Of a stretch of 64,000 nucleotides of DNA, positions 49,913-64,000 are shown in pieces. Both the position numbers and the translations under genes were made by a program. The stretch is taken from IMG/VR virus record IMGVR_UViG_3300020442_000005, positions 1 to 64,000 of that record; one strand, 5' to 3'. Numbering within the stretch: position 1 is the stretch's first letter; each line of letters opens with the position of its first letter. The notes under the pieces were generated by a model, which was not told where the DNA came from, ran no database searches, and saw only the letters and a program-made list of their open reading frames with translations.

Positions 49913-51841
49913 ATGTTCAATACAAGCGTTTTCGAAGAAAAGCAAAAAGAAATCATAGTGCCGGCAGATTGCAACGTAGTGTTTGTGTCTGACGCTTTTG
50001 CAGAGGATTACGTTGGAGGCGCAGAACTCACAACTAAAGCAATCATAGACTCAGCTCCAGAGCACGTTAAGGTTTTTAAAATCCACTCATCTAACGTTAC
50101 AGAAAAAACAATTGAGACAGGCTATCAAAAATATTGGATTTTCGGTAATTATGCTGGACTGAATCCTAACCTTATTCCAGCTTTTGTAAGAAATTGCAAA
50201 TATTCCATTATAGAATATGATTACAAATTTTGCAAATACCGATCGATAGAGAAGCATAAAAACGAAACTGGAAGTGAATGTGATTGCAACGACTCTCCTC
50301 ATGGGAAAATAGTATCAGCATTTAAGCACGGCGCCAAAACAGTATACTGGATGTCAGAAAAGCAATTTAGGCGATACGAAGAAAGATTCCCATTCTTGGG
50401 TGACCCCGCCGAAGGTTCTAGACAGATTATTTTATCTTCTGTTTTTTCAGACCATACATTTGCTGCGCTAGCAGAATTAAGAAGAAAAGCTAGTAACAAT
50501 GGTAAGTACATAGTTTTAGGATCTGACTCTTGGATTAAAGGTAAAGAGGCTTCAATAGAGTACTGTAAAAATAATAATTTAGATTATGAAGTGCTATGGA
50601 ACATACCATATGCCGAGTTTTTGCAAAAGCTTTCAGAATCTGCCGGCTTAGTCTATATGCCTCTCGGTGGAGATACATGTCCCAGAATGGTCCTAGAAGC
50701 TCAGTTAATGGGTAAACAAACAATCGTTAACGAAAACGTACAACATGCATCAGAGTTTCCTTTTACGGGCGGAACAGATGAGGAAATATGGGACTACATG
50801 ACGGGAAGATCTCAACATTTCTGGGTCAACACTATTGATGACATGGATCTGTTCCCTCGTATCTCTGGCTATACAACTACATACAATTGCGAATCGCAGG
50901 GCTATCCATTCGTAAAGTCAATTAAGTCAATGTTACCGTTTTGTGCTGAGATTGTAGTGATGGACGGCGGATCCGATGATGGTACTTGGGAAACATTGCT
51001 TAAACTGGCGGAAGAGAACAAAAAAATCAATGTTTACCAGCATGTTGTTGACTGGAATAAACCAAGATCTGCAGTTGAAGACGGACTTCAAAAAGCAAGG
51101 GCTCGAGCACAGTGTACCCAAAAGTACTGCTGGCAACAGGATGTTGATGAAATCGTACATGAAGATCATTATGCCATGATTTTGAAATTAGCACCACAGT
51201 TTCCGGCATTTGTCGATTTAATATCTTTGCCGGTTGTCGAATATTGGGGAGACAAAGGTAAAGTCCGAATGGATGTTAACCCATGGAAGTGGCGTTTTTC
51301 ACGAAATAAGCCAAATATTACACATGGTATACCTAAGCATCTAAGACGACAAGACGATAATGGTGAACTTTACGCAGAGCAAGGAACGGATGGGTGCGAC
51401 TACATCGACGCTAATACGTATGAGCCTATTCAACATGCATCTTTTTACACGCCTGAGATGCATCAATTACGCTTAAGCGCATTTGATGGTGACTTAGAAG
51501 CCAAGAAAAATTACGAAGCTTTGTTTAATAACATGGTTAAAAAAGTCCCAGGTGTGTTTCATTATTCCTGGTTTGATCTAGAACGAAAGATAAAGACATA
51601 TAGAGGTTTTTGGCAAAGACACTGGGAAAGTCTATACAATGTCAAGCGTGAAGATACGGCAGAAAACAACATGTTTTTTGATAAACCGTGGAATGAAGTA
51701 ACTGATGAAGATATATCAAATCTAGCTACAAAAATGGAAAAAGAAATGGGCGGATGGATTTTTCATAAAAAAATCGATTTTAATTCTCCTACACCCCATC
51801 TTAATTTAGACGTGGCACATCCAGAGATAATGAATGACTGA
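49913..51841 (+). CDS. Bifunctional glycosyltransferase (GT-B-like N-half plus GT2 C-half)
   Basis: PRMVLEAQLMG; TTTYN..VMDGGSDDGT..QDVDE. Confidence 0.8.
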   Translation: MFNTSVFEEKQKEIIVPADCNVVFVSDAFAEDYVGGAELTTKAIIDSAPEHVKVFKIHSSNVTEKTIETGYQKYWIFGNYAGLNPNLIPAFVRNCKYSIIEYDYKFCKYRSIEKHKNETGSECDCNDSPHGKIVSAFKHGAKTVYWMSEKQFRRYEERFPFLGDPAEGSRQIILSSVFSDHTFAALAELRRKASNNGKYIVLGSDSWIKGKEASIEYCKNNNLDYEVLWNIPYAEFLQKLSESAGLVYMPLGGDTCPRMVLEAQLMGKQTIVNENVQHASEFPFTGGTDEEIWDYMTGRSQHFWVNTIDDMDLFPRISGYTTTYNCESQGYPFVKSIKSMLPFCAEIVVMDGGSDDGTWETLLKLAEENKKINVYQHVVDWNKPRSAVEDGLQKARARAQCTQKYCWQQDVDEIVHEDHYAMILKLAPQFPAFVDLISLPVVEYWGDKGKVRMDVNPWKWRFSRNKPNITHGIPKHLRRQDDNGELYAEQGTDGCDYIDANTYEPIQHASFYTPEMHQLRLSAFDGDLEAKKNYEALFNNMVKKVPGVFHYSWFDLERKIKTYRGFWQRHWESLYNVKREDTAENNMFFDKPWNEVTDEDISNLATKMEKEMGGWIFHKKIDFNSPTPHLNLDVAHPEIMND

Positions 51842-52568
51842 TAAACAGCTTAAAGTTTTAGTAACAATATGCAACTATAATCACAGTAAATATTTAGAAC
51901 AATCAATAAAATCTATTCAAGATCAGACATATCAAAACCTTGATATTTGCGTTGTTGATGATGGATCTAAAGACATTGATAAAGTAACAGAGCTAATAAA
52001 CCGGCTTCAAAAAAATGATAAAAGAATTCGATTTATAGATCTCGAGAAAAATTATGGTAAGTGGCATGCGCTCAACGAAGCAATAAGAACGACCGATGCG
52101 CATGTTTGTACTGCCCATGATGCTGACGATGTTTCATTGGTAGATAGAATACATTTGCAGTTGATGACAATGCTCACTTCAAAAACTCAGCACAACTTAT
52201 GTGGGTTTCACCACTGTTGGAATGAAGAGGACGTAAATTCAAGACTTCATGATCGTATCGATGCGTCAAAAGTAAAAATGATTCCACCAGCCGATGTACA
52301 AAAGCTCGTAACTGGTGGTTACAATCACCCTAGTATTAACCATTATTTTACCGGTGATTTTGAGACAGCAGGAGTTTCAGCCATGTTCTACAAACGTATT
52401 TGGGATTATGGGCTAAGATTTAACCCTCCTGGCATGGGATTACGCACTCTTCTTTCTGAGGATTCTGACTTTAATTTTCGTTGTACAGCAGTCACAAACA
52501 CGTCGGTACTTTTAGAAAAGCCGTATCTTTATCGACGAAATACTAGTACAAATCAAGAACTCAGATAA
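51834..52568 (+). CDS. GT2 glycosyltransferase
   Basis: CNYNH..SI..QTY..VVDDGS, HDADD, EDSDF. Confidence 0.92.
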   Translation: MTDKQLKVLVTICNYNHSKYLEQSIKSIQDQTYQNLDICVVDDGSKDIDKVTELINRLQKNDKRIRFIDLEKNYGKWHALNEAIRTTDAHVCTAHDADDVSLVDRIHLQLMTMLTSKTQHNLCGFHHCWNEEDVNSRLHDRIDASKVKMIPPADVQKLVTGGYNHPSINHYFTGDFETAGVSAMFYKRIWDYGLRFNPPGMGLRTLLSEDSDFNFRCTAVTNTSVLLEKPYLYRRNTSTNQELR

Positions 52569-52577
52569 TAGGTAGAC

Positions 52578-53480
52578 ATGTTTTACTCTGACAGAGCTAA
52601 TGTTAACAACCAGTATCTGACAAATGTTTTCTGCGTTGCGAAGACTCATGGCCTTAATTTGCCAGTCTATCAAATTAATTTTTGTAACAAAAACAAATAC
52701 AAGGGTTTAGGTGACATAAAATGTGACGCCTTTGTTCTGATGATATGTGGCAACGAAAATCATGAATCAGTCGAACACTATTTATCTGATTCTAGAGTTA
52801 AAATGATAGTAAAAAATTATCCTAGAATGTTAAACATCACAGACGGGAATGAAACCGGTCAAACGTATGAAACGTTTTTAGATCAAAACGGACGTGAAAA
52901 ATTTATTGTTGAAAAAGAAAGTGATAATATTATTACGATACCACTTGGCTATTGTAACGATTTTAATCCAGTTCCAACATTTAATCACCGGGAGCCTGGT
53001 GGTTTTATTGGGCAGTGGACTCAGTTTCGAAATGATAAGATTAAAGCTATTGACAAAGCTTTCGATGACAGTCCGTATGATTGGGTGTTTTATAGGGGGT
53101 TTGGACCATTTGTTCAATCTGACGTCGATAGCGATAATAAAAAAATTAGCTATAGCTTAAAGCCTAAAATATATTCAAATTTTATGTCAAGGATAGAATC
53201 AGCTTTTGTATTTTCTGGCCAAAGCCCAGAGACTTATAGGCTTTTTGAAGCGGCCATGGCCGGATGTATTATAGTTCATGATATACTTCCGGATACCTGG
53301 TATTATAATGATTTACCGTACGTACCATGTGATTTTGACAATTTTAAATCGGTGTACGATTATATAGAAACCCATAAGCATGACTTAAAATCATTAACTG
53401 GGATATGGTGGCAAAATTTTGCTAGCCCGGTTGCGGTAGGAAATAAAATAGCACAATTTGCAAAGAGCGTAGGTGTTTAA
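52578..53480 (+). CDS. Exostosin-like/GT-B glycosyltransferase-like protein
   Basis: SGQSPETYRLFEAAMAGCI. Confidence 0.6.
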   Translation: MFYSDRANVNNQYLTNVFCVAKTHGLNLPVYQINFCNKNKYKGLGDIKCDAFVLMICGNENHESVEHYLSDSRVKMIVKNYPRMLNITDGNETGQTYETFLDQNGREKFIVEKESDNIITIPLGYCNDFNPVPTFNHREPGGFIGQWTQFRNDKIKAIDKAFDDSPYDWVFYRGFGPFVQSDVDSDNKKISYSLKPKIYSNFMSRIESAFVFSGQSPETYRLFEAAMAGCIIVHDILPDTWYYNDLPYVPCDFDNFKSVYDYIETHKHDLKSLTGIWWQNFASPVAVGNKIAQFAKSVGV

Positions 53481-54200
53481 ATGAAAATACTATATAAATA
53501 TCCAACTAGAGATCGACCTCTAAAGTTTTCAAAATGTATTAACGAATATTACAGGTTGATGGATCGCACATCAGATTTTAATTTTATCGTTACAGTCGAT
53601 GAAGACGACAAAAAAATGAACGATGAAAACGTTATTGATTTCATGAATCAGATTCCTAAATGCAAACATGTCTTTGGGAATAGCTCAACGAAAATCGAGG
53701 CAATTAATGCTGATATTCCAAACGACGACTGGGACATACTGGTCTTAATAAGTGATGATATGATCCCGGAAGTCCCCGGCTTCGATGACATTATTAGGCA
53801 GAAAATGATAAAACATTTTCCAGATACGGACGGTGTGCTTTGGTTCTTTGATGGTTGGCGTAGAGACTTAAATACACTTTGCATACTCGGCCGAAAATAC
53901 TATGATCGATTTGGCTACATATATCATCCAGACTATAAGAGCTTTTGGTGTGATGCTGAATTCACAGAAGTAGCAACAGCGTTGGATAAGCAAGTGTTTA
54001 TAGATCAGGTCATCATTAGGCATTTACATCCGGATATAGTAATGCAAGACAAAGAAACGTACGAAAAGTTTGCATCTTTTTTGCCCGAGTACACGTCTCA
54101 AGGCTCATGTGGTCATGACAGTTTATGGCAAAAAAACGGAAAACTAGATTCCGATGATCATAAAACATACATAGAAAGAAAAAACAATGGATTTAAATAA
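53481..54200 (+). CDS. GT-A fold glycosyltransferase
   Basis: PTRDRP, KIEAIN, ISDDMIP (DD), FWCDAEFT. Confidence 0.75.
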   Translation: MKILYKYPTRDRPLKFSKCINEYYRLMDRTSDFNFIVTVDEDDKKMNDENVIDFMNQIPKCKHVFGNSSTKIEAINADIPNDDWDILVLISDDMIPEVPGFDDIIRQKMIKHFPDTDGVLWFFDGWRRDLNTLCILGRKYYDRFGYIYHPDYKSFWCDAEFTEVATALDKQVFIDQVIIRHLHPDIVMQDKETYEKFASFLPEYTSQGSCGHDSLWQKNGKLDSDDHKTYIERKNNGFK

Positions 54201-54889
54201 TGTCATACGTAGATTCACAGAAAAAAATATGTTTCACCCACATTGCAAAAAACGGCGGTAGGTCTGTAAGTAATTATTTGCTCGAGCTGTGTGGCCCTTC
54301 CGACCATTTTATTGATCAACGCCATCGCGGATGGTGGTTCCAAGGTTCAGGCCATTCGACATATCACTTGGCAAAAAACAATTATGATGAAAACAAAACT
54401 TGGTTTGCTTTTGCACATATAAGAAACCCCATAGATAGAGTATATTCGGCATGGAAAGGTTATGAAATGTATGGCCACGTAATTACATTTCCTAGGTTTT
54501 TAGATTACATTGAAAATTTAAAAGAGAATTCTCCACTTTGGAATGAAAAGGAGTGGGCCCACAACCCACATGATATTCGCGATATGCCAGAAATATATGC
54601 AGATCCGGTCGCTGTTAATGCACACATTGCACCTCAGTGTTTTTATTTTGATAAATCAGACAACATAAAGCTTTATTCTTTTAATAATTTGTTTGGTTTT
54701 GTTGATGATTTACCGGATCAAGAATGGAGACGAGCTGCAAAAACAACCACCAAGCCGCATGTCAAGGACCACGATTATGAGAAACCTACTCATGAAGAAA
54801 GTATAGTAGATCAAATAAAAAGAATTTACGCCAAAGATTTCGAGATATACGAGGAGATTGAAACCAATGAAAAAGCTAATATGTTATAG
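54200..54889 (+). CDS. Sulfotransferase family 2 protein
   Basis: FTHIAKNGGRSV (5'-PSB), IRNPIDRVYSAW (3'-PB). Confidence 0.85.
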   Translation: MSYVDSQKKICFTHIAKNGGRSVSNYLLELCGPSDHFIDQRHRGWWFQGSGHSTYHLAKNNYDENKTWFAFAHIRNPIDRVYSAWKGYEMYGHVITFPRFLDYIENLKENSPLWNEKEWAHNPHDIRDMPEIYADPVAVNAHIAPQCFYFDKSDNIKLYSFNNLFGFVDDLPDQEWRRAAKTTTKPHVKDHDYEKPTHEESIVDQIKRIYAKDFEIYEEIETNEKANML

Positions 54890-55541
54890 TCTCTGGGGAA
54901 AGGACCCAAAATACACAATAGGCGCAATCAGAAACGCAGAGCAAATCAAAAAAATATATCCAGGCTGGATTGCTAGGTTTTACTGTGGAACATCAGTACC
55001 AGATGATATAACATCTCAACTTCTCGATTTAGGTACCGAAGTAACCCTTATGCCAGAAGAAGGCAACTGGTCTGGAATGTTTTGGCGTTTTGCTGCTATA
55101 GCTGAGCCTGACGTTGAAGTAATGTTGTCACGCGATACAGACTCCAGGTTAACCAACAGAGAAGCTTTAGCAGTGAATCAATGGTTACAGTCAGACAAAC
55201 TGTTTCATGTCATGAGAGATCATCCTGAACATAATACTGAAATACTAGGCGGTATGTGGGGAGCAAAAAAACCTATACTGCAAGACATGATACAGCTTAT
55301 GAATTCCTATGAGAAAGGCGACTTTTGGCAAGTTGACCAAAACTTTCTAAGACAAGTCATTTGGCCCCGGGTAGCATATACAACCTTTACTCACGATCCG
55401 TTTTTTGCAAAAATTCCATTTCCCAGTCCGAGAAACGGATTAGAATTTGTTGGCCAAGTATGGAACGAAAACGAAGAAACAGTGGTAGAACATCAGCAGC
55501 TCTTAAAAGCCGCAATCGAGAGACAAAACAATGAAGTATAA
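54867..55541 (+). CDS. Putative glycosyltransferase-like protein (SLWG..KY..GA..N family)
   Basis: MFWRF, RDTDSR (DxD), MRDHP.H, ILGGMWG. Confidence 0.65.
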   Translation: MKKLICYSLWGKDPKYTIGAIRNAEQIKKIYPGWIARFYCGTSVPDDITSQLLDLGTEVTLMPEEGNWSGMFWRFAAIAEPDVEVMLSRDTDSRLTNREALAVNQWLQSDKLFHVMRDHPEHNTEILGGMWGAKKPILQDMIQLMNSYEKGDFWQVDQNFLRQVIWPRVAYTTFTHDPFFAKIPFPSPRNGLEFVGQVWNENEETVVEHQQLLKAAIERQNNEV

Positions 55542-56229
55542 ACAGACAAGTCAGTACGGTGAATGTAAAATCTTGCATGCGTTATTTTCAGGCAATCCTG
55601 CGGGGTACTTTATAGACATCGGCGCTGCTGACGGTATTAGATATTCGAATACGCTCAACTTGATCGATAGTGGCTGGAGTGGAATATTAGTTGAACCTTG
55701 CAAGCATTTTTTATCTACGTTAAACAAGAACAACTCAGATAATCCAAACGTGCACGTATTTGCAGGAGCAGTTTCAGACTACAATGGAGAATCAAACTTC
55801 TATGTTTGGAAAGAAAAAGGGGATTCTCAAATTTCCACTATTGAAGATGAACAATATGAAAGCATACGGAATGACGAGTGGTGGAAATCACAGGGTTCAT
55901 TTACTGATCAGTATCTAGTTGATGTTATTAGACCATCAGAATTACTTGAAAAATTTAATTGCCCAAAGAAAATAGAATTTGTTGATATCGATGCTGAGGC
56001 TTCTGAAATGAAAATATTAAATAATTGGCCATGGGATGATTATGCAGTTGAGTTATTTTGCATTGAGTTTTCTATGGGCAAAGATTTTATAACAAAGTTT
56101 ATGAAAGAGAAAAATTATGTTCCGATAGTACAAACCGGTGGAAATTTACTTTTTTGCAAAAAACAGCAGTATTCAGAATTTTTAGCAAGGTTAGAAGCAA
56201 ATTTGGCTGAGATGATGGTGAAATCGTGA
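55531..56229 (+). CDS. FkbM-family methyltransferase
   Basis: FIDIGAADG..SNT, VEP, DIDAE..E. Confidence 0.88.
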   Translation: MKYKQTSQYGECKILHALFSGNPAGYFIDIGAADGIRYSNTLNLIDSGWSGILVEPCKHFLSTLNKNNSDNPNVHVFAGAVSDYNGESNFYVWKEKGDSQISTIEDEQYESIRNDEWWKSQGSFTDQYLVDVIRPSELLEKFNCPKKIEFVDIDAEASEMKILNNWPWDDYAVELFCIEFSMGKDFITKFMKEKNYVPIVQTGGNLLFCKKQQYSEFLARLEANLAEMMVKS

Positions 56230-57086: not shown

Positions 57087-57095
57087 GAGAGACAC

Positions 57096-58580: not shown

Positions 58581-59257
58581 TTGACGTAATCATGCCAGCA
58601 TATCTACCGACCAAAGGTCATCATGACATGCTGTTGCGCGCTATTAAATCTTTAGAAAAACAAACATATAAAGATTTTTCTGTTATCGTCGTTTTGAATG
58701 GATGTTATACAGAATATAACACGATAATAGAATCTGTTGATTCTCCGCTTAGAATTACTTGGCTGACAATAGACGGAAAAGCATCGGGTGCTATTGCTCG
58801 TAATTTTGGCATCAACCACTCAAAAGCTAAGTACATTGCGCAGCTAGATGCCGACGATCAATACCATGAAGACAAGTTAAAAATACAATATGAGTTTTTT
58901 AAAAATAACAGTAGCTACGACTTTGTCGGCACTTTGGCAGCGGACTATTACGGACCGGACGATATTAGAGCTTCAATTTTTGACCCGGGTCAATTTCAAA
59001 CCCATATGCAGATATCTCGAGGATTGCTTTTGCAAAACATAATGTGTCATGGTTCAATCATGTTTAAACGAAGTGCGTTCTTACAGCTTGGTGGATATGT
59101 TGAAAAATATAAGCCAGGCGATGTTTGGCCTGAATATAATCGAAGAATGTGGGAGGATTGGGATTTATGGAAACGAGCTATACAAAACGGCTACAGGTTC
59201 TATAATATCCCAGAAAGACTGTATTATTGGTCGACTAACACTAGCGTCGAGAGGTAA
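58577..59257 (+). CDS. GT2 glycosyltransferase
   Basis: DVIMPAY, ARNFGI, LDADD, EDWDLW. Confidence 0.92.
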   Translation: MIDVIMPAYLPTKGHHDMLLRAIKSLEKQTYKDFSVIVVLNGCYTEYNTIIESVDSPLRITWLTIDGKASGAIARNFGINHSKAKYIAQLDADDQYHEDKLKIQYEFFKNNSSYDFVGTLAADYYGPDDIRASIFDPGQFQTHMQISRGLLLQNIMCHGSIMFKRSAFLQLGGYVEKYKPGDVWPEYNRRMWEDWDLWKRAIQNGYRFYNIPERLYYWSTNTSVER

Positions 59258-59260
59258 ACG

Positions 59261-59935
59261 ATGTATGATGAGCAACGAAGAGCAAATGAATCTTATTTAT
59301 GGAGATTCTTAGGACAGGAATATAGAAGATTTGATTATGGTCAAACAGTCGATAGCAACTATGGAAACGTATATACAGGGCTAATTTCAAAAGATCCAGT
59401 TTTCCTAGATTTAGGCGCTTTCAAAGGTAATTGGTCAAAAGAAATGGTGACTAGATACGGTGGTTGCGCGCATCTGTTTGAGGTGCAGCCTAATCTAGTT
59501 AAAAGACTCAAAGATGACCTAGGCGACGATATGCGATATACAGTGTATGACTATGGATTAGCACCAAAAAACGAACTAATTGATGTTGGATCGTACGATG
59601 ATGGAGAAGGTTTTAGTTTATCGAAACCAAAATCCGTTGGAATCTCAAACAAAGTCGAGCTTAAGTCATTTAAAGATTTTGTGGAACAAAACAACATCAA
59701 AGAAATTGACGTTTGTAAAATAAACATTGAAGGTTCAGAATACGATCTACTCGAAAACATGATTGAAAACAACTTGCATATGCTTTGTAGGAATATACAG
59801 GTTGAATTCCATAGGCAATATCCAGTACCAAACTGGTACAATAGATACAACTCAATCCGGAACAATCTATTGAAGACGCATACGCCAACTTTAGACTATT
59901 ATTTTTCTTGGCAAAATTGGTGTCGAAAAGATTAA
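59261..59935 (+). CDS. FkbM-family methyltransferase
   Basis: LDLGAFKG, FEV, KINIEGSEY, QVEFH. Confidence 0.88.
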   Translation: MYDEQRRANESYLWRFLGQEYRRFDYGQTVDSNYGNVYTGLISKDPVFLDLGAFKGNWSKEMVTRYGGCAHLFEVQPNLVKRLKDDLGDDMRYTVYDYGLAPKNELIDVGSYDDGEGFSLSKPKSVGISNKVELKSFKDFVEQNNIKEIDVCKINIEGSEYDLLENMIENNLHMLCRNIQVEFHRQYPVPNWYNRYNSIRNNLLKTHTPTLDYYFSWQNWCRKD

Positions 59936-59956: not shown

Positions 59957-61183
59957 ATGAGTACTAGAGACGTAGCATCCCAGATCAAATACGTAGGTGG
60001 CCTGACATTGCCAGAGATGCTTAATACAGCAAACCCAGTCTGGGTTCAGGCAGCTGAAAACACTATCAACCTCATGAACAGAAGACAGTTTTCCGAAAAC
60101 CCTGATCGGAAAAACGTTACTATATGTTATAACAACATGGGTCGTGACATGGGAGATTTAGGCAATCAGCTGTTTCAATTAGCGTTTCTTGTTGGTATGG
60201 CTAAAGTTAACAAAACTTCTTTTAAGATTCCTAATGGAAATTCGCCATACTACAAAGAAAAGGGAGTAAAATTAAATTGTTTTGATATTCCAGAGCATTT
60301 ACTTCACGATATTCCTCTTACGGAAAATACGGTCAACCTGTCAGAAAAATCATTTAACTTAAGAGACGAAACATTATCAATGTTTTATTGTACGGCTCAC
60401 TATCTAGGAATACTTCCAAAAAATTGCAACATTAATATCTTCGGGTTTTTTCAAAACTACATGATAGCTGACTATTTGGATGATGATCTCCGAAAGCTCT
60501 TAACATTTAAAGAAGAGCATGAACAAAGAGCAGAAGATTTTATTAAGGCGCTAAAGTCAAAATACAAAGACCCGGTAGCTTTTGTACATGTGAGACTTGG
60601 TGACCAAAAGGACGACGAGGTCAACCACCCTGTACTAACAAAAGAGTATTACGACATTGCTTTTAAAAAATGTTTGGATTCAAACCCTAATACAAAGTTT
60701 CTTATAATTTCAGATGAGCCAGAAGACTGTAAGAAAATATACCATGGTCCGCAGTTTATTTATCAGAATGATATTTTTGAAAAAGAAATTAGTGACCATA
60801 GAACAGAGCAGGATTTGAAATCGTATTTTTCGGCACCCGTAGATCTATGCATTATGTCAAAAGCAGAAACTTTAATAATGGCAAACAGTACTTTCAGCTG
60901 GTGGGGAGCCTGGCTAGCAAAAGACGCTAAGATATATGCGCCAATCAGATCGAGATGGTTCGGTCAGGCCTTGAATTTTAAACCAATGACTGATTTTTAT
61001 CCCCCAAGATGGGAAGAGATTTGGTTTCCACAAATAGAAAATGCTAAATTTAACAAATCGCAGACATATATGATTCCTATTTTTGGAGATGATCGATCAC
61101 CAGTGAGTTTTGACGAGCTAGGATTATTGAAATCAGAACAAGAAATTGATAACTTTATTATTAAGGCAATGCAATTGCATTAA
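59957..61183 (+). CDS. GT11 alpha-1,2-fucosyltransferase-like protein
   Basis: GDLGNQLFQ, HVRLGD, ISDE, NSTFSWWGAWL. Confidence 0.92.
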   Translation: MSTRDVASQIKYVGGLTLPEMLNTANPVWVQAAENTINLMNRRQFSENPDRKNVTICYNNMGRDMGDLGNQLFQLAFLVGMAKVNKTSFKIPNGNSPYYKEKGVKLNCFDIPEHLLHDIPLTENTVNLSEKSFNLRDETLSMFYCTAHYLGILPKNCNINIFGFFQNYMIADYLDDDLRKLLTFKEEHEQRAEDFIKALKSKYKDPVAFVHVRLGDQKDDEVNHPVLTKEYYDIAFKKCLDSNPNTKFLIISDEPEDCKKIYHGPQFIYQNDIFEKEISDHRTEQDLKSYFSAPVDLCIMSKAETLIMANSTFSWWGAWLAKDAKIYAPIRSRWFGQALNFKPMTDFYPPRWEEIWFPQIENAKFNKSQTYMIPIFGDDRSPVSFDELGLLKSEQEIDNFIIKAMQLH

Positions 61184-61198
61184 ACGTAAGGGTTGAAT

Positions 61199-61864
61199 AT
61201 GAAAAAATTAAATTATAATTCTTCTAGATACAGATTTGCAGAGATAGTTTGCGAGCATTTTAAAGTTACTTCTTTAGAAAATTTACATATTGAAAGGAAA
61301 GACTTACTGCCACAAGAAAAATTAAACTTTGAAAATGAAAGCAAAACAAGATATCATGATCATTTTTACTCAAGGTTACGATCTGGCTGGGATGAAATAA
61401 CAACAGCGTATGAGACTTTTATAAAAAACGAAATAAAACCATTAGTTAGAGACGAGTTTGTATATCAAGCGTTTCCTACTGTGCGTTTTCATATTCCAGG
61501 TGATCAGGCTATACATTATTGGCATTACGATTCCGATGAAGATCATCGACACCCAGAAGGTGAAATTAATTTTCAAGTTGCATTAACCAATATACATGAT
61601 ACACAAGCCATGTGGATAGAATCAGTTCCGGGATTGGGGGATTATTCTCCAATGAATATGTCGTACGGCGAATATTACGTATTTAATGGCAACAAATGCA
61701 CTCATGGAAATAAATGTAATGAGACTAATAAAACAAGAGTAAGTTTTGATTTTAGAATATTGCCTTTAAAAAAGTACGAAAATTATTTAAAATCAAACAC
61801 AAATAAAAGTTCAGCAACAATGGACAGAAAATTTATTGTTGGAAGCTATTATTCAAAATTTTAG
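61199..61864 (+). CDS. 2OG-Fe(II)/StrG-like oxygenase
   Basis: YQ.FPT.RFH.PG, HYD, HGN..N....RVSFDFR. Confidence 0.75.
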   Translation: MKKLNYNSSRYRFAEIVCEHFKVTSLENLHIERKDLLPQEKLNFENESKTRYHDHFYSRLRSGWDEITTAYETFIKNEIKPLVRDEFVYQAFPTVRFHIPGDQAIHYWHYDSDEDHRHPEGEINFQVALTNIHDTQAMWIESVPGLGDYSPMNMSYGEYYVFNGNKCTHGNKCNETNKTRVSFDFRILPLKKYENYLKSNTNKSSATMDRKFIVGSYYSKF

Positions 61865-61874: not shown

Positions 61875-62453
61875 ATGAGTACAGATGAAAAAAAACACTA
61901 TACATACGACTATTGGTTTAAAAACGATTTTCACAAATCATGGCATGAAGGTGGCGAAGAATATTACGTTAACCGATTTTATGAAGACATAGTTTTTAAT
62001 CTAGATATTCCGAATGAAGGATATATAGTTGTTTTAGGCACTTACAAATGCGTTTCTTTCGAAAAGCTGTGTAAAAAGTATGGCGCGGAAAGATGCATAG
62101 GGTATGATTTACATAACCCTACTAATCATCCAAGAGTAATTATAAAAAACGGTTTGGAGTTATCATCTGAAGACAATATCCCAATCGCGTTCTGCCATAA
62201 TGATTTTGGTGGTTTTCAACATACACCAAAGCTGAAAATCCACGGTCAGAAGTGGGCTGCCCAGAATATTATACCGGGAGGCTATTTTTTAGGCAACAGT
62301 AGCCAGAATAGCATAAATTTTGACATTGAAAAGTTAATGTCTGACATTGGTTTTGTTAATACACGATTGGTGGATTTACCACCAGAAAAGTTTAATTTAT
62401 CTAATCTACCAGAGTTTAGACATCATTCTTATATGCTGTCAAGGAGAAAATAA
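61875..62453 (+). CDS. Hypothetical protein (possible degenerate SAM-binding fold)
   Basis: VVLGT..IGYDL; weak support. Confidence 0.55.
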   Translation: MSTDEKKHYTYDYWFKNDFHKSWHEGGEEYYVNRFYEDIVFNLDIPNEGYIVVLGTYKCVSFEKLCKKYGAERCIGYDLHNPTNHPRVIIKNGLELSSEDNIPIAFCHNDFGGFQHTPKLKIHGQKWAAQNIIPGGYFLGNSSQNSINFDIEKLMSDIGFVNTRLVDLPPEKFNLSNLPEFRHHSYMLSRRK

Positions 62454-63116
62454 ATGTGGGCAGAGTTAAATGAAGTGATACCGCTCTTATCAGAACAAGG
62501 ATTTGTAATAAATGACCCATGGGACGTAGTAAAAGCTTTTGAGAAAAAAGTTGCAAACTACGCTGGAGCTAAATACGCAATTGCGCTCGATAATTGTACG
62601 AATGGTTTATTTCTGTGTTTAAAGTATTTAAAACATGAAGGCAAAACAATCGAAATACCTGCGTGTACTTATATTTCAGTTCCCTTTGCAATTATTCATG
62701 CTGGCTGTAAACCAAAGTTTGTAGACAAAGAGTGGTCAGGTAAGTATGAACTAGGAGACACTAACATTATTGATGGCGCCACAAGATTTTCCAAAAACAT
62801 GTATGAACCAGGAACTTTTCACTGTTTGTCTTTTCATTTAAAAAAAGTGTTAAAGTTGGGCAAAGGTGGCATGATTTTAACTGATGATAAAGAAGCCTAT
62901 GATTGGTTTCAGTCCGCATCAAAAATAGGAAGACATGTTGATCGATTATATAAAGACGACTACTTTGACATTGTTGGTTGGAATATGTTTATGCCACCCG
63001 AGCAGGCAGCAAAGGCGATTTTATTGTTTGAAAATCTAGCCGATGAAAATGCTGATGCTGGTGGCTCTAGTACATATCATGATCTTAGAAAACACAAAAT
63101 TTTTAGAGAATACTAA
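62454..63116 (+). CDS. Short DegT/DnrJ/EryC1/StrS aminotransferase-like protein
   Basis: AIALDNCTNGLFL, PACTY.SV, LSFHLKK, GKGGMILTDD. Confidence 0.85.
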   Translation: MWAELNEVIPLLSEQGFVINDPWDVVKAFEKKVANYAGAKYAIALDNCTNGLFLCLKYLKHEGKTIEIPACTYISVPFAIIHAGCKPKFVDKEWSGKYELGDTNIIDGATRFSKNMYEPGTFHCLSFHLKKVLKLGKGGMILTDDKEAYDWFQSASKIGRHVDRLYKDDYFDIVGWNMFMPPEQAAKAILLFENLADENADAGGSSTYHDLRKHKIFREY

Positions 63117-64000
63117 TGCAAAACGTTTACCTCTTTGAAATCAACGACATTCTTGCAAATCAAGCAAAATTGCCATATTCTACTGGCTTGATTTGGTCTT
63201 ATTGTTCAACGATACCTGAAATAGATAATGCTTATACCTTGGGAAATCTTTTCTTTTGGCGTCAAAGCACAGAAGATTATTTGAAACAAATAGAAAATCC
63301 GTCAGTTGTGGGTTTTAGTTGTTTTGTGTGGAATTGGACTAGCAACATCGAGATGGCAAAAGCAATTAAAGATAAATACCCTGATTGCTTAATTGTATTT
63401 GGCGGATGGCAAGTTCCTATGTCTGATCGTATACAAGGGTTTTTTCGAAAGCATCCGTACGTAGATATAGCAGTGCATGGCGAAGGTGAGCTTACATTTG
63501 CTGATATTTTGCTGGAAAACTTAAAAGGATTTCCTGAGTGGGAAAAAATCGAGGGATGTTCTGTTCCATATAGAATGCTACATAACAAAAAATCGATTAA
63601 TAGAATTGTAGATCACGGTTTGGTAACAAAAAAAGAAATATTCGCAAAATCTTACAAACCTCTTGATACGTTCACAACAAAACCAAGAGCAAGAATAAAA
63701 TCAATTGCATCGATGCCGTCTCCTTACTTAGATGGTTTATTTGACAGATTAATTAAGGACTGTAACTATGATTTAGAAGCTACGTTTGAAACGACGAGAG
63801 GGTGTCCGTATGCATGCACATATTGCGAAATAGGAACAAAATATTATCAAAAAATAAAATACCATGGATTAGAAAAAATATATGCTGAGATAGACTGGAT
63901 GTCAGAAAACAAGGTAGTATTTGTTTACAATGCCGACTCTAACTTTGGCATGTTAAAGGATCATCTTCCAATTACAAAATATCTTGTAGACAAAAAAAAG
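63116..64000 (+). CDS. B12-binding radical SAM protein, 3'-truncated by the window (absent from the ORF track)
   Basis: TAATG coupling; open frame MQNVYLFE..LPYSTGLIWSY..FGG..HGEGE..ETTRGCPYACTYC (63803). Confidence 0.9.
   Translation, partial: MQNVYLFEINDILANQAKLPYSTGLIWSYCSTIPEIDNAYTLGNLFFWRQSTEDYLKQIENPSVVGFSCFVWNWTSNIEMAKAIKDKYPDCLIVFGGWQVPMSDRIQGFFRKHPYVDIAVHGEGELTFADILLENLKGFPEWEKIEGCSVPYRMLHNKKSINRIVDHGLVTKKEIFAKSYKPLDTFTTKPRARIKSIASMPSPYLDGLFDRLIKDCNYDLEATFETTRGCPYACTYCEIGTKYYQKIKYHGLEKIYAEIDWMSENKVVFVYNADSNFGMLKDHLPITKYLVDKKK

What the first reader, a model, noticed from the sequence alone, without database searches (positions are those of the whole stretch)
49913..64000. >14 kb glycan synthesis and decoration island directly after the giant fibre gene
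Seen: at least 15 contiguous genes (7-8 GTs including GT2 and GT11, 2 FkbM methyltransferases, a sulfotransferase, an oxygenase, an aminotransferase and 2 B12 radical SAMs), with no flippase, polymerase or chain-length gene in the window. Inference: not a bacterial O-antigen locus but a phage pathway that builds a methylated/sulfated/fucosylated glycan on virion proteins (the Ser/Thr/Asn-rich fibre is adjacent), on DNA, or on the host surface.
Basis: partly seen in the sequence, partly recalled or inferred. Interest (0 to 1): 0.68.

Follow-up and report, generated by a model that had tools for sequence, protein, structure and literature searches.

The report
Phage glycan island: fixed core, swappable cassette
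A large uncultured marine T4-like phage carries a 22.6 kb block of soluble sugar-building enzymes between a giant fibre gene and its baseplate genes; it has a conserved glycosyltransferase core plus a swappable tailoring cassette, and most likely builds a decorated glycan inside the infected cell, possibly to coat the virion.

Summary
The window is bases 1-64000 of a 273 kb IMG/VR virus record with a T4-type major capsid protein. From 49913 to 72494 there are 23 tightly packed same-strand ORFs:
- 8 firm glycosyltransferase proteins (9 domains) plus 2 probable ones;
- 2 FkbM methyltransferases and a sulfotransferase;
- a 2OG oxygenase and a miniature DegT aminotransferase;
- 2 cobalamin radical-SAM enzymes, one of the TokK/CysS/KedN5 class;
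- GMD, an Fcl-like reductase, a GalE-like epimerase, a short NDP-sugar dehydrogenase and a PD-(D/E)XK nuclease.

None has a transmembrane segment. The whole record has no Wzx, Wzy or initiating phosphoglycosyl transferase. Baseplate genes follow the island.

Forty related viral loci and the cultured Flavobacterium phage immuto show the anatomy. A conserved core (fused GT-B+GT2 protein, then nuclease-GT4a-GT4b) flanks a hot spot holding 0.2 to 17.4 kb of variable glycan genes.

So it is a phage pathway, not a bacterial O-antigen locus. The target is unproven. I favour a phage-encoded acceptor, probably virion proteins (about 0.45). Host-surface remodelling comes next (about 0.3). DNA glycosylation is disfavoured, because published nucleoside analysis of immuto DNA shows no glycosylated base. 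I class it as a new variant of a known kind.

The parts
43876..49833 (+). Giant fibre-like protein (1985 aa). It is context and a candidate acceptor, not an enzyme.
   Evidence: YadA_head repeat, 34.9 bits. G/S/T/N/D-rich, K/E-poor composition. A partial homolog (35 % over 256 aa) lies directly upstream of the GT2L homolog in L043.
49913..51841 (+). GT2L: a fused two-domain glycosyltransferase (642 aa) and conserved core gene. Residues ~22-301 form a compact GT-B fold; residues ~322-432 are a GT2 (GT-A) domain.
   Evidence: PF00535, 37.5 bits. The N-terminal domain gave an AF2 model with pLDDT 75; Foldseek matches MshA, GlgM, WaaG, PimB', T4 alpha-glucosyltransferase and Gtf3 at E down to 2e-6. 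Full-length homologs (609-640 aa, 47-52 % identity) occur in 9 related loci, plus a C-terminal fragment cut by the contig end in L042; the N-domain alone (~280 aa) is found after GT4a-GT4b in 5 more distant loci.
51834..52568 (+). GT2 glycosyltransferase (244 aa); cassette gene.
   Evidence: PF00535, 79.3 bits.
52578..53480 (+). Probable GT-B-type glycosyltransferase (300 aa); a lead only.
   Evidence: No Pfam, NCBIfam or PHROG hit. ESM Atlas feature neighbours (0.96-0.97) are viral clusters carrying RXYLT1_C, Glyco_trans_1_2 or Exostosin. No homolog in the 16 rSAM2-anchored loci.
53481..54200 (+). Glycosyltransferase (239 aa); cassette gene.
   Evidence: phrog_14945 'glycosyltransferase', E 1.6e-16.
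54200..54889 (+). Carbohydrate-type sulfotransferase (229 aa).
   Evidence: PF03567 Sulfotransfer_2, 45.4 bits against a cut-off of 22, covering profile positions 5-250 of 252. No tblastn match in 50,697 GenBank phage records. No APS kinase in the record, so PAPS must come from the host.
54858..55541 (+). Probable GT-A-type glycosyltransferase (227 aa); a lead only.
   Evidence: Atlas neighbours at 0.99 are viral clusters, one auto-named 'hexosyltransferase'. The nearest Pfam-bearing clusters are GT8/Nucleotid_trans at 0.92. The sequence has a D-T-D motif.
55531..56229 (+). FkbM-family methyltransferase 1 (232 aa).
   Evidence: PF05050, 47.6 bits. TIGR01444, 56.7 bits against a cut-off of 37.7.
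56226..57086 (+). GT-B-type glycosyltransferase (286 aa).
   Evidence: PF13524 Glyco_trans_1_2, 81.9 bits.
57096..58580 (+). Cobalamin-binding radical SAM enzyme 1 (494 aa); subclass open.
   Evidence: PF04055 82.6 bits plus PF02310 36.9 bits. Best NCBIfam hits are HpnJ, PhpK, BchE and AprD4 at 72-99 bits, all far below their cut-offs. A 72 % identical homolog lies in L017. Only Streptomyces phage SF3 matches among GenBank phages.
58577..59257 (+). GT2 glycosyltransferase (226 aa).
   Evidence: PF00535, 70.3 bits.
59261..59935 (+). FkbM-family methyltransferase 2 (224 aa).
   Evidence: PF05050, 41.4 bits.
59957..61183 (+). GT11-family (alpha-1,2-fucosyltransferase family) glycosyltransferase (408 aa).
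   Evidence: PF01531, 36.1 bits against a cut-off of 23.9. Homologs in L005, L007, L017 and L061.
61193..61864 (+). 2OG-Fe(II) oxygenase of the 'sporadic carbohydrate cluster' type (223 aa). First gene of a conserved trio.
   Evidence: TIGR04324, E 9e-11, 41.8 bits, below the cut-off of 150. Homologs at 40-52 % identity in 8 of the 16 rSAM2-anchored viral loci (a weak ninth, 29 %, in L018) and 40-41 % in two Prochlorococcus single-cell contigs.
61875..62453 (+). Unknown 192 aa ORF.
   Evidence: No hit in Pfam, NCBIfam or PHROGs. One 50 % identical homolog next to the mini-DegT in L041.
62454..63116 (+). Miniature DegT-type PLP enzyme (220 aa against the usual ~370 aa). Second gene of the trio.
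   Evidence: PF01041, 83.2 bits in two stretches. The invariant SFHxKK lysine and the D-x-A motif are kept in 10 homologs of 204-259 aa. AF2 pLDDT 89.4; the fold equals the PLP-binding large domain only. Nearest structures are a sugar transaminase from Archaeoglobus (7b0d), then GDP-perosamine synthase, ArnB and WbpE. Also present in phage immuto at 43 % identity.
63116..64000 (+). Cobalamin-dependent radical SAM C-methyltransferase 2. The full ORF is 670 aa and continues to contig base 65128. Third gene of the trio.
   Evidence: NF033712 KedN5 family, 225 bits. A profile of 11 homologs hits TokK at 425 bits and CysS at 245 bits in the PDB. The invariant C230/C234/C237 give the CxxxCxxC motif. 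Homologs in 16 viral loci (40-67 %) and two Prochlorococcus contigs (64-66 %).

Best explanation
SHOWN. The region is a phage-encoded, entirely soluble (cytoplasmic) glycan-assembly island of 23 ORFs, 49913-72494 on the contig.

It has two layers.
1. A conserved core. This is the fused GT-B+GT2 protein at 49913-51841 together with PD-(D/E)XK nuclease, GT4a and GT4b at 69223-72494. It gives four glycosyltransferase domains, and both GT4 proteins keep the EX7E motif.
2. A variable cassette between the two halves of the core.

In this phage the cassette is 17.4 kb. By annotation it encodes:
- sugar-nucleotide supply: GMD plus an Fcl-like reductase, expected to give GDP-L-fucose; GMD plus a perosamine-synthase-like mini-DegT, expected to give a 4-amino-6-deoxyhexose; and a GalE-like epimerase with a short NDP-sugar dehydrogenase;
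- five to seven further glycosyltransferases, including a GT11;
- tailoring enzymes: two FkbM methyltransferases, a sulfotransferase, a 2OG oxygenase and two cobalamin radical-SAM enzymes, one of the TokK/CysS/KedN5 iterative C-methylase class.

INFERRED. The core enzymes add a short conserved glycan, sugar by sugar, directly onto an acceptor in the cytoplasm of the infected cell. The cassette enzymes then extend and decorate it with fucose or amino-deoxyhexose, O-methyl, sulfate and C-methyl/alkyl groups, giving a strain-specific outer structure. The host must supply GDP-mannose, UDP-sugars, PAPS, SAM and cobalamin.

MY COMMITMENT. The acceptor is phage-encoded, most likely virion surface proteins: the neighbouring fibre, other tail fibres, or the capsid protein's G/S/T-rich insertion. 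The product would then be a variable glycan coat on the particle, built as chloroviruses, mimiviruses and some mycobacteriophages build theirs.
For: Phage origin and extent.

Enzyme identities. GMD passes its equivalog cut-off (454.5 against 415 bits).

All soluble, no lipid-carrier machinery. No initiating transferase, flippase, polymerase or multi-span protein occurs anywhere in 273 kb. That fits sequential cytoplasmic glycosylation. It excludes a self-sufficient Und-P pathway and en-bloc periplasmic transfer.

Core plus hot spot.
- All 24 viral loci anchored on GT4a show GT4a-GT4b followed by the same downstream genes (the 72783-type, 73890-type, gp25, baseplate wedge), where the contig reaches that far (L054 ends earlier). 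The nuclease lies upstream of GT4a in 20 of them.
- GT2L-to-nuclease spacing is 0.2 kb in four loci, 0.8 kb in one, 1.8 kb in three, 5.1 kb in one and 17.4 kb here.
- Six cassette genes in the window have no homolog in the 16 rSAM2-anchored loci.

Clade-signature inheritance across host phyla. In 50,697 GenBank phages, GT4a matches only the phages whose capsid protein is also nearest: Flavobacterium phage immuto, Microcystis phage Mel-JY01, Rhodothermus phage RM378 and one metagenomic megaphage. The only extra is a weak hit to Tetrasphaera phage TJE1. A GT pair that travels with the capsid gene across hosts with unrelated envelopes argues for a phage-encoded acceptor.

Position. The island lies between a fibre gene and the baseplate module, on the same strand, with overlapping genes.

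DNA is an unlikely target. Immuto shares nuclease-GT4a-GT4b-mini-DegT. Its virion DNA gave dA, dC, dT plus fdPreQ1 and no glycosylated nucleoside (bioRxiv 10.1101/2023.04.13.536721).

Precedent. Virion glycosylation by phage GTs is documented in mycobacteriophages (Freeman et al. 2023, as cited in PMC12619734).
Against: - No glycan or acceptor has been observed; the target is inference only.
- No mycobacteriophage-style Ser/Thr-rich C-terminal tail was found on the capsid protein, and no strong S/T tract on any structural protein.
- In the more distant relatives immuto, Mel-JY01 and RM378, the GT4a-GT4b pair sits among replication and lysis genes, and in immuto about 20 kb from the baseplate. 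The structural-module position is therefore lineage-specific synteny, not a clade-wide rule.
- The closest cellular homologs of the oxygenase/mini-DegT/rSAM trio lie in Prochlorococcus single-cell genome contigs, in what looks like cell-surface sugar gene context. That fits the host-surface rival equally well.
- The record is only about 82 % complete, so missing export genes cannot be fully excluded.
- Small soluble GT2 and GT11 enzymes also act on lipid-linked acceptors in bacteria.
Confidence: 0.45

Rival explanations
1. Host-surface remodelling. The phage enzymes act at the inner face of the host membrane on the host's own lipid-linked O-antigen, capsule or EPS intermediates, and the host's exporters carry the altered glycan outward. 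This would change the infected cell's surface: superinfection exclusion, less loss of progeny on debris, or altered grazing. It is the explanation proposed for the 'LPS/cell-wall' clusters of large cyanomyoviruses.
For: - Precedent by hypothesis: P-SSM2 has 24 'LPS' genes (PMC1079782). S-SCSM2R has 22 such genes, including 13 GTs (PMC12801897).
- The oxygenase/mini-DegT/rSAM2 trio and GMD/Fcl-like genes occur at 40-66 % identity in two Prochlorococcus single-cell contigs with mixed-strand, cell-like context.
- GT2, GT11, FkbM and sulfotransferase families are typical of bacterial surface-polysaccharide loci (established knowledge).
Against: - No initiating transferase, flippase, polymerase, ligase or ABC exporter in 273 kb, so it would depend completely on host machinery accepting foreign structures.
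- The core GTs are inherited with the capsid gene across phages of Bacteroidota, Rhodothermota and Cyanobacteriota, whose surface acceptors differ.
- The function has never been shown experimentally for the cyanophage clusters either.
- No integrase was looked for or seen. The lifestyle is presumed lytic from the T4-like gene set (inference).
Confidence: 0.3
2. DNA hypermodification. The glycosyltransferases decorate hydroxymethylated pyrimidines in phage DNA with a complex glycan to evade restriction.
For: - T4-like ancestry.
- The GT-B fold of the core domains also matches T4 alpha-glucosyltransferase among many others.
- GT4b scores on PF20706 'GT4 in conflict systems' at 40.7 bits.
- A PD-(D/E)XK nuclease is linked to the GT4 pair.
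- The genome encodes a divergent thymidylate-synthase-family protein (44 bits) beside dUTPase and dCMP deaminase.
- Phage GTs that put diverse glycans on DNA are known (bioRxiv 10.1101/2023.12.21.572611).
Against: - Immuto, which shares the nuclease-GT4a-GT4b-mini-DegT block, has virion DNA made of unmodified dA, dC and dT plus fdPreQ1.
- GDP-fucose synthesis, GT11, O-methyl and sulfo transfer, and cobalamin radical-SAM alkylation are not known in any DNA modification pathway.
- The TS-like gene lies 115 kb from the island, in an ordinary dTMP-synthesis neighbourhood.
- PF00534 scores higher than PF20706 on the same protein.
Confidence: 0.05
3. Another cytoplasmic product: a glycosylated small molecule or host protein, for example to interfere with host defence or metabolism, or a secreted glycoconjugate unrelated to the virion or envelope.
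For: - TokK/CysS/KedN5-class and AprD4/PhpK-like radical-SAM enzymes are best known from natural-product pathways.
- All enzymes are soluble.
Against: - No polyketide, NRPS, RiPP precursor or aglycone-forming genes lie in or near the island.
- Nine or more GT domains point to an oligo- or polysaccharide rather than a glycoside.
- The core is conserved next to structural genes in 24 loci.
Confidence: 0.12
4. Artefact: a bacterial O-antigen or capsule locus joined to phage DNA by mis-assembly, or a prophage-flanking host region.
For: - Island GC (0.373) is slightly below the genome mean (0.399).
- Many families are typical of bacteria.
Against: - Phage genes flank the island on both sides on the same strand, with overlapping reading frames.
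- The same architecture occurs in 24 independent viral contigs and in cultured phage immuto.
- Near-identical DNA is present in marine metagenomes of at least 8 studies.
- No wzx/wzy/wzz.
Confidence: 0.02

Closest known systems
[quoted passage not shown]
   Same: - Large marine T4-like myoviruses carrying about 22-24 sugar genes (PMC1079782; PMC12801897).
- In S-SCSM2R these include 13 glycosyltransferases, with GT2 and GT11 families among them, and NDP-sugar epimerases.
- The function is untested there too.
   Different: - Different phage lineage: the capsid protein is only about 33 % identical to cyanomyovirus gp23, there is no psbA, and the replicative polymerase is DnaE-type.
- The genes here form one block, with a conserved GT core and a defined hot spot next to fibre and baseplate genes.
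- The block contains cobalamin radical-SAM enzymes, a sulfotransferase, FkbM methyltransferases and a mini-DegT. None of these appears among the S-SCSM2R cell-wall genes quoted in the passages I read.
- The radical-SAM and sulfotransferase genes have essentially no match in GenBank phages.
[quoted passage not shown]
   Same: - True homology: PD-(D/E)XK nuclease, GT4a, GT4b and mini-DegT at 29-43 % identity in the same order.
- These are followed by GT2, aminotransferase, methyltransferase and epimerase genes.
- The capsid protein and baseplate wedge are also homologous.
   Different: - The immuto block is smaller: about 11 kb and roughly 14 genes.
- It lacks the fused GT2L, radical-SAM, sulfotransferase, GT11, GMD and Fcl genes.
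- It is separated from the baseplate by about 20 kb of small genes.
- In RM378 only the GT pair remains, among replication genes.
Virus-encoded virion glycosylation: chlorovirus PBCV-1 capsid glycans, mimivirus fibril glycans, mycobacteriophage Che8-type capsid/tail glycans
   Same: - Works alike, if my reading is right: soluble virus-encoded GTs, virus-encoded sugar-nucleotide synthesis (GMD plus a reductase in chloroviruses) and methyltransferases.
- The glycan is built in the cytoplasm without the host's lipid-carrier pathway.
- Gene content differs from clade to clade. (These points rest on established knowledge; Freeman 2023 is cited.)
   Different: - No sequence-level membership was shown.
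- No glycosylated virion protein has been shown here.
- No Ser/Thr-rich C-terminal acceptor tail was found.
Bacterial flagellin and serine-rich-adhesin glycosylation islands (cytoplasmic O-glycosylation)
   Same: - Islands of soluble GTs, DegT aminotransferases and FkbM-type methyltransferases without wzx/wzy.
- They glycosylate a secreted filament protein before export.
- The GT-B domain of GT2L matches Gtf3/GtfC of serine-rich-repeat glycosylation, among many other GT-B folds.
   Different: - No Maf, GtfA/GtfB-specific or TPR-GT signature was found.
- Both GT4 proteins look catalytically competent rather than forming an active/inactive pair.
TokK / ThnK / CysS / KedN5 cobalamin-dependent radical SAM methylases
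   Same: - N-terminal B12 domain and an invariant CxxxCxxC.
- Profile score of 425 bits to TokK and 245 bits to CysS.
   Different: - Embedded in a sugar pathway of a phage, and of Prochlorococcus islands, instead of an antibiotic cluster.
- Substrate unknown.
- Below the NCBIfam subfamily cut-off (225 against 700 bits).

Membership tests
Wzx/Wzy-dependent O-antigen or capsule locus | Wzx flippase (multi-span, PF01943/PF13440) | tested here: not met
   PF01943 gave no hit in the 273 kb record, while 13 of 14 control genomes gave one. No ORF has more than 3 hydrophobic segments.
Wzx/Wzy-dependent O-antigen or capsule locus | Wzy polymerase / O-antigen ligase domain (PF04932) and a Wzz chain-length regulator | tested here: not met
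   PF04932 gave no hit. No multi-span protein exists. Wzz (PF02706) was not searched by model; no island ORF has the two-TM layout.
Wzx/Wzy- or ABC-dependent surface polysaccharide locus | Initiating polyprenyl-phosphate glycosyl-phosphate transferase (WbaP/PglC type PF02397, or WecA type) | tested here: not met
   PF02397 gave no hit. WecA-type enzymes have about 11 TM segments, and no such ORF exists. Caveat: the record is about 82 % complete.
Glycan ('LPS/CWSM') clusters of large T4-like marine phages | Located in a T4-like myovirus genome | tested here: met
   PF07068 Gp23 at 211.8 bits. gp25-like baseplate wedge. Capsid tblastn hits 2590 T4-like records.
Glycan ('LPS/CWSM') clusters of large T4-like marine phages | Many glycosyltransferases plus NDP-sugar epimerases/dehydratases clustered together | tested here: met
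   9 firm GT domains, GMD, an Fcl-like reductase, a GalE-like epimerase and an NDP-sugar dehydrogenase within 22.6 kb.
Glycan ('LPS/CWSM') clusters of large T4-like marine phages | Member of the cyanomyovirus lineage (Kyanoviridae-type capsid, psbA) | tested here: not met
   The capsid is about 33 % identical to cyanomyoviruses against 44-48 % to immuto and Mel-JY01. No psbA.
Phage virion glycosylation systems (mycobacteriophage type) | GT genes encoded by the phage near structural genes | tested here: met
   The island lies between the fibre gene and the baseplate module here and in the 23 GT4a-anchored related loci that extend into the baseplate module.
Phage virion glycosylation systems (mycobacteriophage type) | Ser/Thr-rich C-terminal extension on capsid or tail tube as acceptor | tested here: not met
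   The capsid C-terminus is ordinary. Only scattered S/T-dense 20-mers occur in fibre-like proteins. The capsid does have a G/S/T/A-rich internal insertion, whose role is unknown.
Phage virion glycosylation systems (mycobacteriophage type) | Glycan demonstrated on virion proteins | not testable with these tools
   Needs purified particles and glycoproteomics.
Phage DNA glycosylation (T4 alpha/beta-GT type and relatives) | Pathway making a hydroxymethyl-pyrimidine acceptor (dNMP hydroxymethylase or TET/JBP) | tested here: inconclusive
   One divergent thymidylate-synthase-family ORF (44-46 bits) sits next to dUTPase and dCMP deaminase. It could be an ordinary ThyA. The island's 2OG oxygenase matches a carbohydrate-cluster family; no TET/JBP family appeared in the Pfam or NCBIfam scans of it.
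Phage DNA glycosylation (T4 alpha/beta-GT type and relatives) | Glycosylated nucleosides in virion DNA | not testable with these tools
   Indirect evidence only: the homologous-core phage immuto shows dA, dC, dT and fdPreQ1.
Class B (cobalamin-dependent) radical SAM methylases, TokK/CysS/KedN5 group | N-terminal B12-binding domain plus a CxxxCxxC radical SAM core | tested here: met
   PF02310 and PF04055. C230, C234 and C237 are invariant in 11 homologs.
Class B (cobalamin-dependent) radical SAM methylases, TokK/CysS/KedN5 group | Specific similarity to characterised members | tested here: met
   A profile of the phage family scores 425.5 bits on TokK (7kdx) over 570 residues and 244.6 bits on CysS. 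NF033712 scores 225 bits, below its cut-off of 700, so this is a related subfamily, not an equivalog.
GDP-mannose 4,6-dehydratase (Gmd) | Score above the equivalog cut-off | tested here: met
   TIGR01472 scores 454.5 bits against a cut-off of 415. The gene lies at contig 68143-69174, outside the window.
DegT/DnrJ/EryC1 sugar aminotransferases | Full two-domain fold-type I architecture (~360-400 aa) with the catalytic lysine | tested here: inconclusive
   The lysine (SFHxKK) and the PLP-ring aspartate region are kept. However, the protein is 220 aa, lacks the C-terminal domain and about 60 residues of the large domain, and aligns to about 235 columns of chains of about 365 residues. The short form is conserved in 13 viral loci, in immuto and in 2 Prochlorococcus contigs, so it is not a pseudogene.

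The most novel reading that the evidence does not exclude
A whole lineage of marine T4-like jumbo phages keeps an invariant four-domain glycosyltransferase core beside its fibre and baseplate genes. Next to it is a recombination hot spot where cassettes of 0 to 17 kb or more of glycan genes are exchanged, some of them shared with Prochlorococcus surface-sugar islands. The product is a strain-specific glycan coat on the virion, a phage 'serotype'. It would be built from fucose- and perosamine-type 6-deoxyhexoses that are O-methylated, sulfated and C-alkylated by cobalamin radical-SAM enzymes, a chemistry not reported for any virus particle.
Probability: 0.3. Interest if true: 0.85.

Novelty: new variant of a known kind. 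Interest (0 to 1): 0.58.

Why it matters
Large sugar-gene clusters in marine phages have been catalogued for twenty years without a tested function. This locus gives the problem a clear anatomy: a core of three glycosyltransferase proteins conserved throughout this lineage, two of which (GT4a-GT4b) travel with the capsid gene across phages of three host phyla, and a hot spot whose content ranges from nothing to 20 genes.

It also points to a cultured, tractable relative. Flavobacterium phage immuto shares the GT4a-GT4b pair of that core, with the linked nuclease and the mini-DegT, so virion, host-surface and DNA targets can be told apart directly in that phage.

If the glycan sits on the particle, it would bring virion glycan coats, known from giant viruses and mycobacteriophages, to abundant marine phages. 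That bears on host recognition, particle stickiness, grazing and antigenic diversity.

Independently of the target, the island adds two cobalamin radical-SAM enzymes, a carbohydrate sulfotransferase and a miniature PLP aminotransferase to the phage enzyme repertoire. It also ties a phage glycan pathway to the host's B12 and PAPS supply.

Tried and rejected
- **T4 late-promoter motif.** TATAAATA occurs 13 times in 273 kb, only 3 of them intergenic. The copy at 49903 overlaps the ribosome-site spacer 10 nt before the ATG. No timing information came from this.
- **Sigma-70 and terminator scans.** On L002 1-16000 (contig 62001-78000) the counts were at shuffle level: 55 against 51.3 +/- 6.9 promoter-like sites, and 9 against 11.9 +/- 4.2 terminator-like sites. 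The operon structure is therefore inferred from gene packing only. One scan call failed on a size limit.
- **Nucleotide search.** Megablast of 10 kb of the island against GenBank phages found no match.
- **Host assignment failed.**
  - There is no psbA.
  - The tmRNA is a standard one-piece type whose tag I could not place.
  - The nearest cultured capsid relatives infect Flavobacterium, Microcystis and Rhodothermus.
  - The closest cellular homologs of the trio are in Prochlorococcus single-cell contigs.
  - These signals conflict, so I leave the host open.
- **Possible infected single cell.** I suspected run X8 (a named organism, 3 million letters). Its three contigs have the same lengths, depths and differences as those of metagenome run X3, so it adds nothing about the host.
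- **RNA evidence.** No RNA run holds the stretch, so there is no expression evidence.
- **'Moraphage' membership (PMC12619734).** That lineage also has four core GT families and Bacteroidota hosts, but is described with PolB. This genome has a DnaE-type polymerase, and I had no moraphage sequences to compare. Left open.
- **Acceptor motif.** A search for Ser/Thr-rich acceptor tails found nothing convincing.
- **GtfA/GtfB-like pair.** I considered an active/inactive GT4 pair and rejected it, because both proteins keep the EX7E motif.
  - Complex prediction: I make no binding claim.
  - The two large protein searches: the family scans and locus searches sufficed.
- **Operator limits.**
  - No alternative genetic code was needed.
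  - Read laying was given exactly 6,000 letters.

Full report
**1. Where the window lies**

- The window is bases 1-64000 of a single 273,025 bp IMG/VR virus record: linear, with CheckV completeness about 82 %.
- I laid the whole record in the Python box and called ORFs. Of the 284 ORFs, 273 are on the + strand, and coding density is 0.93.
- The record encodes a T4-type major capsid protein (PF07068, 211.8 bits, contig 130393-132372).
- By tblastn the nearest capsid relatives are Flavobacterium phage vB_FspM_immuto (43.6 %), Microcystis phage Mel-JY01 (47.7 %), Rhodothermus phage RM378 (42 %) and metagenomic megaphages. Cyanomyoviruses are at about 33 %.
- Near-identical DNA of the island occurs in marine metagenomes of at least eight studies. 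No RNA run holds it.
- So this is a marine, distantly T4-like jumbo phage. The host is undetermined.

**2. The observation**

- From 49913 to the window end there are 16 contiguous + strand ORFs, separated by -32 to +21 nt.
- Model-based annotation gives:
  - three GT2 domains, a Glyco_trans_1_2 protein, a GT11 protein and a PHROG glycosyltransferase;
  - two FkbM methyltransferases and a Sulfotransfer_2 protein;
  - a 2OG oxygenase of the 'sporadic carbohydrate cluster' family;
  - a DegT-family protein;
  - two B12-binding radical SAM proteins.
- Two further ORFs are probable glycosyltransferases by ESM Atlas neighbours only. One 192 aa ORF is unknown.
- The gene upstream, 43876-49833, encodes a 1985 aa fibre-like protein with a YadA-head repeat and fibre-type composition.

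**3. The island is larger than reported**

Contig coordinates continue the window numbering. Past 64000 the annotation is:

| Contig position | Product | Evidence |
|---|---|---|
| 63116-65128 | second radical SAM protein, 670 aa | runs across the window end |
| 65140-66063 | Fcl-like reductase | GDP-L-fucose synthase model, 224 bits |
| 66047-67063 | GalE-like epimerase | |
| 67251-68150 | NDP-sugar dehydrogenase lacking its C-terminal domain | TIGR03026 positions 1-295 of 413 |
| 68143-69174 | GDP-mannose 4,6-dehydratase | 454.5 bits, above the equivalog cut-off of 415 |
| 69223-70092 | PD-(D/E)XK nuclease | |
| 70031-71332 | GT4a | |
| 71274-72494 | GT4b | |

- After the island come small conserved genes. 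One of them, 72783-73523, has a weak hit to a gp55-type late sigma factor (E 0.0025).
- These are followed by a gp25-like wedge protein (76112-76648), a baseplate wedge homolog and several fibre-sized proteins of 1181-1846 aa.
- In total the island has 23 ORFs over 22.6 kb, about 8 % of the record. Its GC is 0.373 against 0.399 genome-wide.

**4. No export or lipid-carrier machinery**

- A hydrophobicity scan finds no ORF in the whole record with more than 2 segments at the strict threshold, or more than 3 at a lax one. No island ORF has a convincing membrane span.
- Six-frame model searches of the record for Wzx (PF01943), Wzy_C (PF04932) and Bac_transf (PF02397) find nothing, while the control genomes respond.
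It is not met.

**5. Extra structure-based annotation**

- *The 642 aa protein (GT2L).*
  - Its N-terminal 300 residues had no family hit.
  - With an alignment of five homologs they fold (pLDDT 75) into a compact GT-B glycosyltransferase. Matches include MshA, GlgM, WaaG, PimB', T4 alpha-glucosyltransferase and Gtf3.
  - The protein is therefore a GT-B + GT2 fusion.
- *GT4a and GT4b.* Both keep the EGFGLxxLE (EX7E) motif.
- *The DegT-like protein.*
  - It is a conserved miniature form of 204-259 aa in 13 viral loci, immuto and two Prochlorococcus contigs. It retains the SFHxKK lysine.
  - Its confident model (pLDDT 89) corresponds to the PLP-binding large domain only.
  - Its nearest solved relatives are sugar aminotransferases. 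GDP-perosamine synthase ranks first by sequence profile. An Archaeoglobus sugar transaminase ranks first by fold, followed by GDP-perosamine synthase, ArnB and WbpE.
- *The 670 aa radical SAM protein.*
  - It belongs with the iterative cobalamin-dependent C-methylases TokK and CysS (profile scores 425 and 245 bits) and with the KedN5 family.
  - Its CxxxCxxC motif is invariant.

**6. Comparative anatomy**

*Loci anchored on the 670 aa radical SAM protein.* This search returned 16 viral loci.
- They share a trio of oxygenase, mini-DegT and radical SAM enzyme, together with Fcl-like/GMD genes and a GT4a-GT4b-(GT-B domain) block.
- Most other genes differ.
- Six of the in-window cassette genes have no homolog in any of the 16.

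*Loci anchored on GT4a.* This search returned 24 closer loci at 49-73 % identity.
- All 24 carry GT4a-GT4b, preceded by the nuclease in 20. The same downstream genes then lead into the baseplate module wherever the contig extends that far.
- The full-length fused GT2L is present in 9 of them, plus a C-terminal fragment cut by the contig end in L042.
- The distance from GT2L to the nuclease is 0.2 kb in four loci, 0.8 kb in one, 1.8 kb in three, 5.1 kb in one and 17.4 kb in this phage.
- Eleven others have cassette genes filling the 4-10 kb recovered upstream of the nuclease or GT4a without reaching GT2L.
- In L043 a fibre homolog lies directly upstream of GT2L. In L051 the PhoH-region genes of the window are kept upstream, but the fibre is replaced.

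The island is therefore a conserved glycosyltransferase core that brackets a hot spot, and that hot spot lies beside a variable fibre gene.

**7. Deeper relatives**

- In 50,697 GenBank phage records, GT4a matches only the phages that also have the nearest capsid proteins, plus a weak hit to Tetrasphaera phage TJE1.
- Immuto has nuclease-GT4a-GT4b followed by GT2, aminotransferase, methyltransferase, mannosyltransferase, mini-DegT (43 % identical), acetyltransferase, epimerase and GT genes.
- Mel-JY01 has a similar small block.
- RM378 has only the GT pair, among replication genes.
- In immuto the block lies about 20 kb from the baseplate.
- So the GT pair is an old, vertically inherited feature of this clade. 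The clade's hosts span Bacteroidota, Rhodothermota and Cyanobacteriota. The placement inside the structural module, however, is specific to the lineage of this phage.

**8. Cellular relatives**

- The only close cellular homologs of the radical SAM enzyme (64-66 % identity) are on long contigs of two Prochlorococcus single-cell genomes.
- There the oxygenase and mini-DegT, together with Fcl-like and (in L027) GMD homologs, lie nearby in mixed-strand, low-GC context with no other phage-like genes.
- This shows gene flow between marine cells' sugar islands and these phages. It does not identify the host.

**9. What it does**

*Shown.* The enzyme families, their solubility, the core-plus-cassette anatomy and the phage context.

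*Inferred from established enzymology.*
- GMD and the Fcl-like reductase supply GDP-L-fucose for the GT11 enzyme.
- GMD and the perosamine-synthase-like mini-DegT could supply a 4-amino-4,6-dideoxyhexose.
- FkbM enzymes O-methylate and the sulfotransferase sulfates the glycan. The record has no APS kinase, so PAPS comes from the host.
- The TokK/CysS-like enzyme methylates an unactivated carbon. CysS and KedN5 extend O-methyl groups, so one attractive possibility is that it acts on a methyl group installed by an FkbM enzyme. That is speculation.

*The acceptor.* It is not visible in sequence. I favour a phage-encoded acceptor, most likely virion proteins, for four reasons:
1. The core GTs are inherited with the capsid gene across hosts whose envelopes are unrelated.
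2. There is no lipid-carrier machinery.
3. In this lineage the core always lies between fibre and baseplate genes.
4. The DNA alternative is contradicted by published HPLC-MS of immuto virion DNA, which shows dA, dC, dT and fdPreQ1 only (bioRxiv 10.1101/2023.04.13.536721).

*Against this reading.*
- No Ser/Thr-rich acceptor tail was found.
- The synteny argument fails in distant relatives.
- The cellular homologs sit in probable surface-sugar islands.

Host-surface remodelling, as proposed but never tested for P-SSM2-type clusters (PMC1079782; PMC12801897), remains a serious rival.

**10. Comparison and novelty**

- Large glycan clusters in big marine myoviruses are known: P-SSM2 with 24 genes, and S-SCSM2R with 22 genes including 13 GTs, described there as possibly the highest number in a marine phage.
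- The 'moraphage' paper notes four core GT families in an aquatic jumbo-phage lineage with Bacteroidota hosts (PMC12619734). That may or may not be the same lineage.
- What is new here:
  - the resolved anatomy of conserved core, hot spot and variable cassette;
  - its homology to a cultured phage;
  - the link to Prochlorococcus islands;
  - enzyme types essentially absent from GenBank phages, namely two cobalamin radical-SAM enzymes and a carbohydrate sulfotransferase;
  - a conserved miniature DegT.
- I class it as a new variant of a known kind, with moderate-to-high interest. The interest comes mainly from the cultured relative, which makes an old open question directly testable: what are phage 'LPS' clusters for?

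**11. Limits**

- The target of the glycan, the timing of expression and the host are all unproven.
- The record is incomplete.
- Two GT assignments rest on language-model neighbours only.

Noticed in passing
window 9008-9366 (+): A phage-encoded one-piece tmRNA (Rfam RF00023, 114.7 bits) with predicted tag peptide ANNNDNFEVALAA. I could not tie the tag to a host group.
   Followed up: partly
window 37004-38929 (+), with 35694-36992 upstream: A PrkA/YeaG-like serine kinase (phrog_22605). It is 30-34 % identical to genes of Thermus phages, Ralstonia jumbo phage RsoM2USA and metagenomic megaphages. The neighbouring ORF hits phrog_35217, of unknown function.
   Followed up: partly
window 41860-43218 (+), 39065-40297 (+), 23516-24931 (+), 30197-31357 (+): PhoH-like protein, a weak GroEL-like hit (E 1.3e-8), an HNH endonuclease and a phrog_9968 methyltransferase. 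The PhoH region is syntenic with related locus L051.
   Followed up: no
window 43231-43569 (+): A small ORF just upstream of the giant fibre has a weak H-type lectin domain hit (E 0.0023, below cut-off) and an S/T-dense stretch. It may be a carbohydrate-binding fibre accessory.
   Followed up: no
window 49834-49912: The 79 nt fibre-to-island spacer contains an 8 nt perfect inverted repeat (CTGTTTTA ... TAAAACAG). It also holds a TATAAATA that overlaps the ribosome-site spacer. Its regulatory meaning is untested.
   Followed up: no
contig 67251-68150 (outside window; L002 5251-6150): An NDP-sugar dehydrogenase lacking the C-terminal UDP-binding domain (299 aa, matching profile positions 1-295 of 413). 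This short form is conserved in other viral loci: 277-313 aa in L012, L013 and L015, and 37-68 % identical in several GT4a-anchored loci. It is therefore probably functional in some other way.
   Followed up: partly
contig 130393-132372 (outside window; L021 322-2301): The T4-type major capsid protein is 659 aa. It has a large G/S/T/A-rich insertion (roughly residues 130-400) that does not align with relatives; tblastn matches come in two pieces covering 55-71 %.
   Followed up: partly
contig 183843-195110 (outside window; L036): Replication and nucleotide block. It holds a DnaE-type Pol III alpha (not PolB or PolA), a divergent thymidylate-synthase-family protein (about 45 bits), DUF6378, dUTPase, an extra NDP-sugar dehydratase-like SDR, a DHH phosphoesterase, dCMP deaminase and an Fe/Mn superoxide dismutase. 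Homologs of the extra SDR occur inside the glycan cassettes of several related loci.
   Followed up: partly
L023 and L027 (Prochlorococcus single-cell genome contigs): The oxygenase / mini-DegT / TokK-like radical SAM trio occurs in two Prochlorococcus SAG contigs at 40-66 % identity to the phage proteins, apparently in sugar-gene islands. This points to phage-cell exchange of glycan-tailoring genes.
   Followed up: partly
L025, L026 (Acutalibacteraceae MAG contigs): Tandem arrays of two to six B12 radical SAM paralogs related to the phage enzymes (25-32 % identity). They look like a natural-product-type cluster and are unrelated to the phage island.
   Followed up: no
runs X8 and X3 on window 57001-58765: A small run labelled with a named organism (X8) holds three contigs identical in length, depth and differences to those of marine metagenome run X3. 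It is probably the same data filed twice or a derived bin, not independent evidence.
   Followed up: yes
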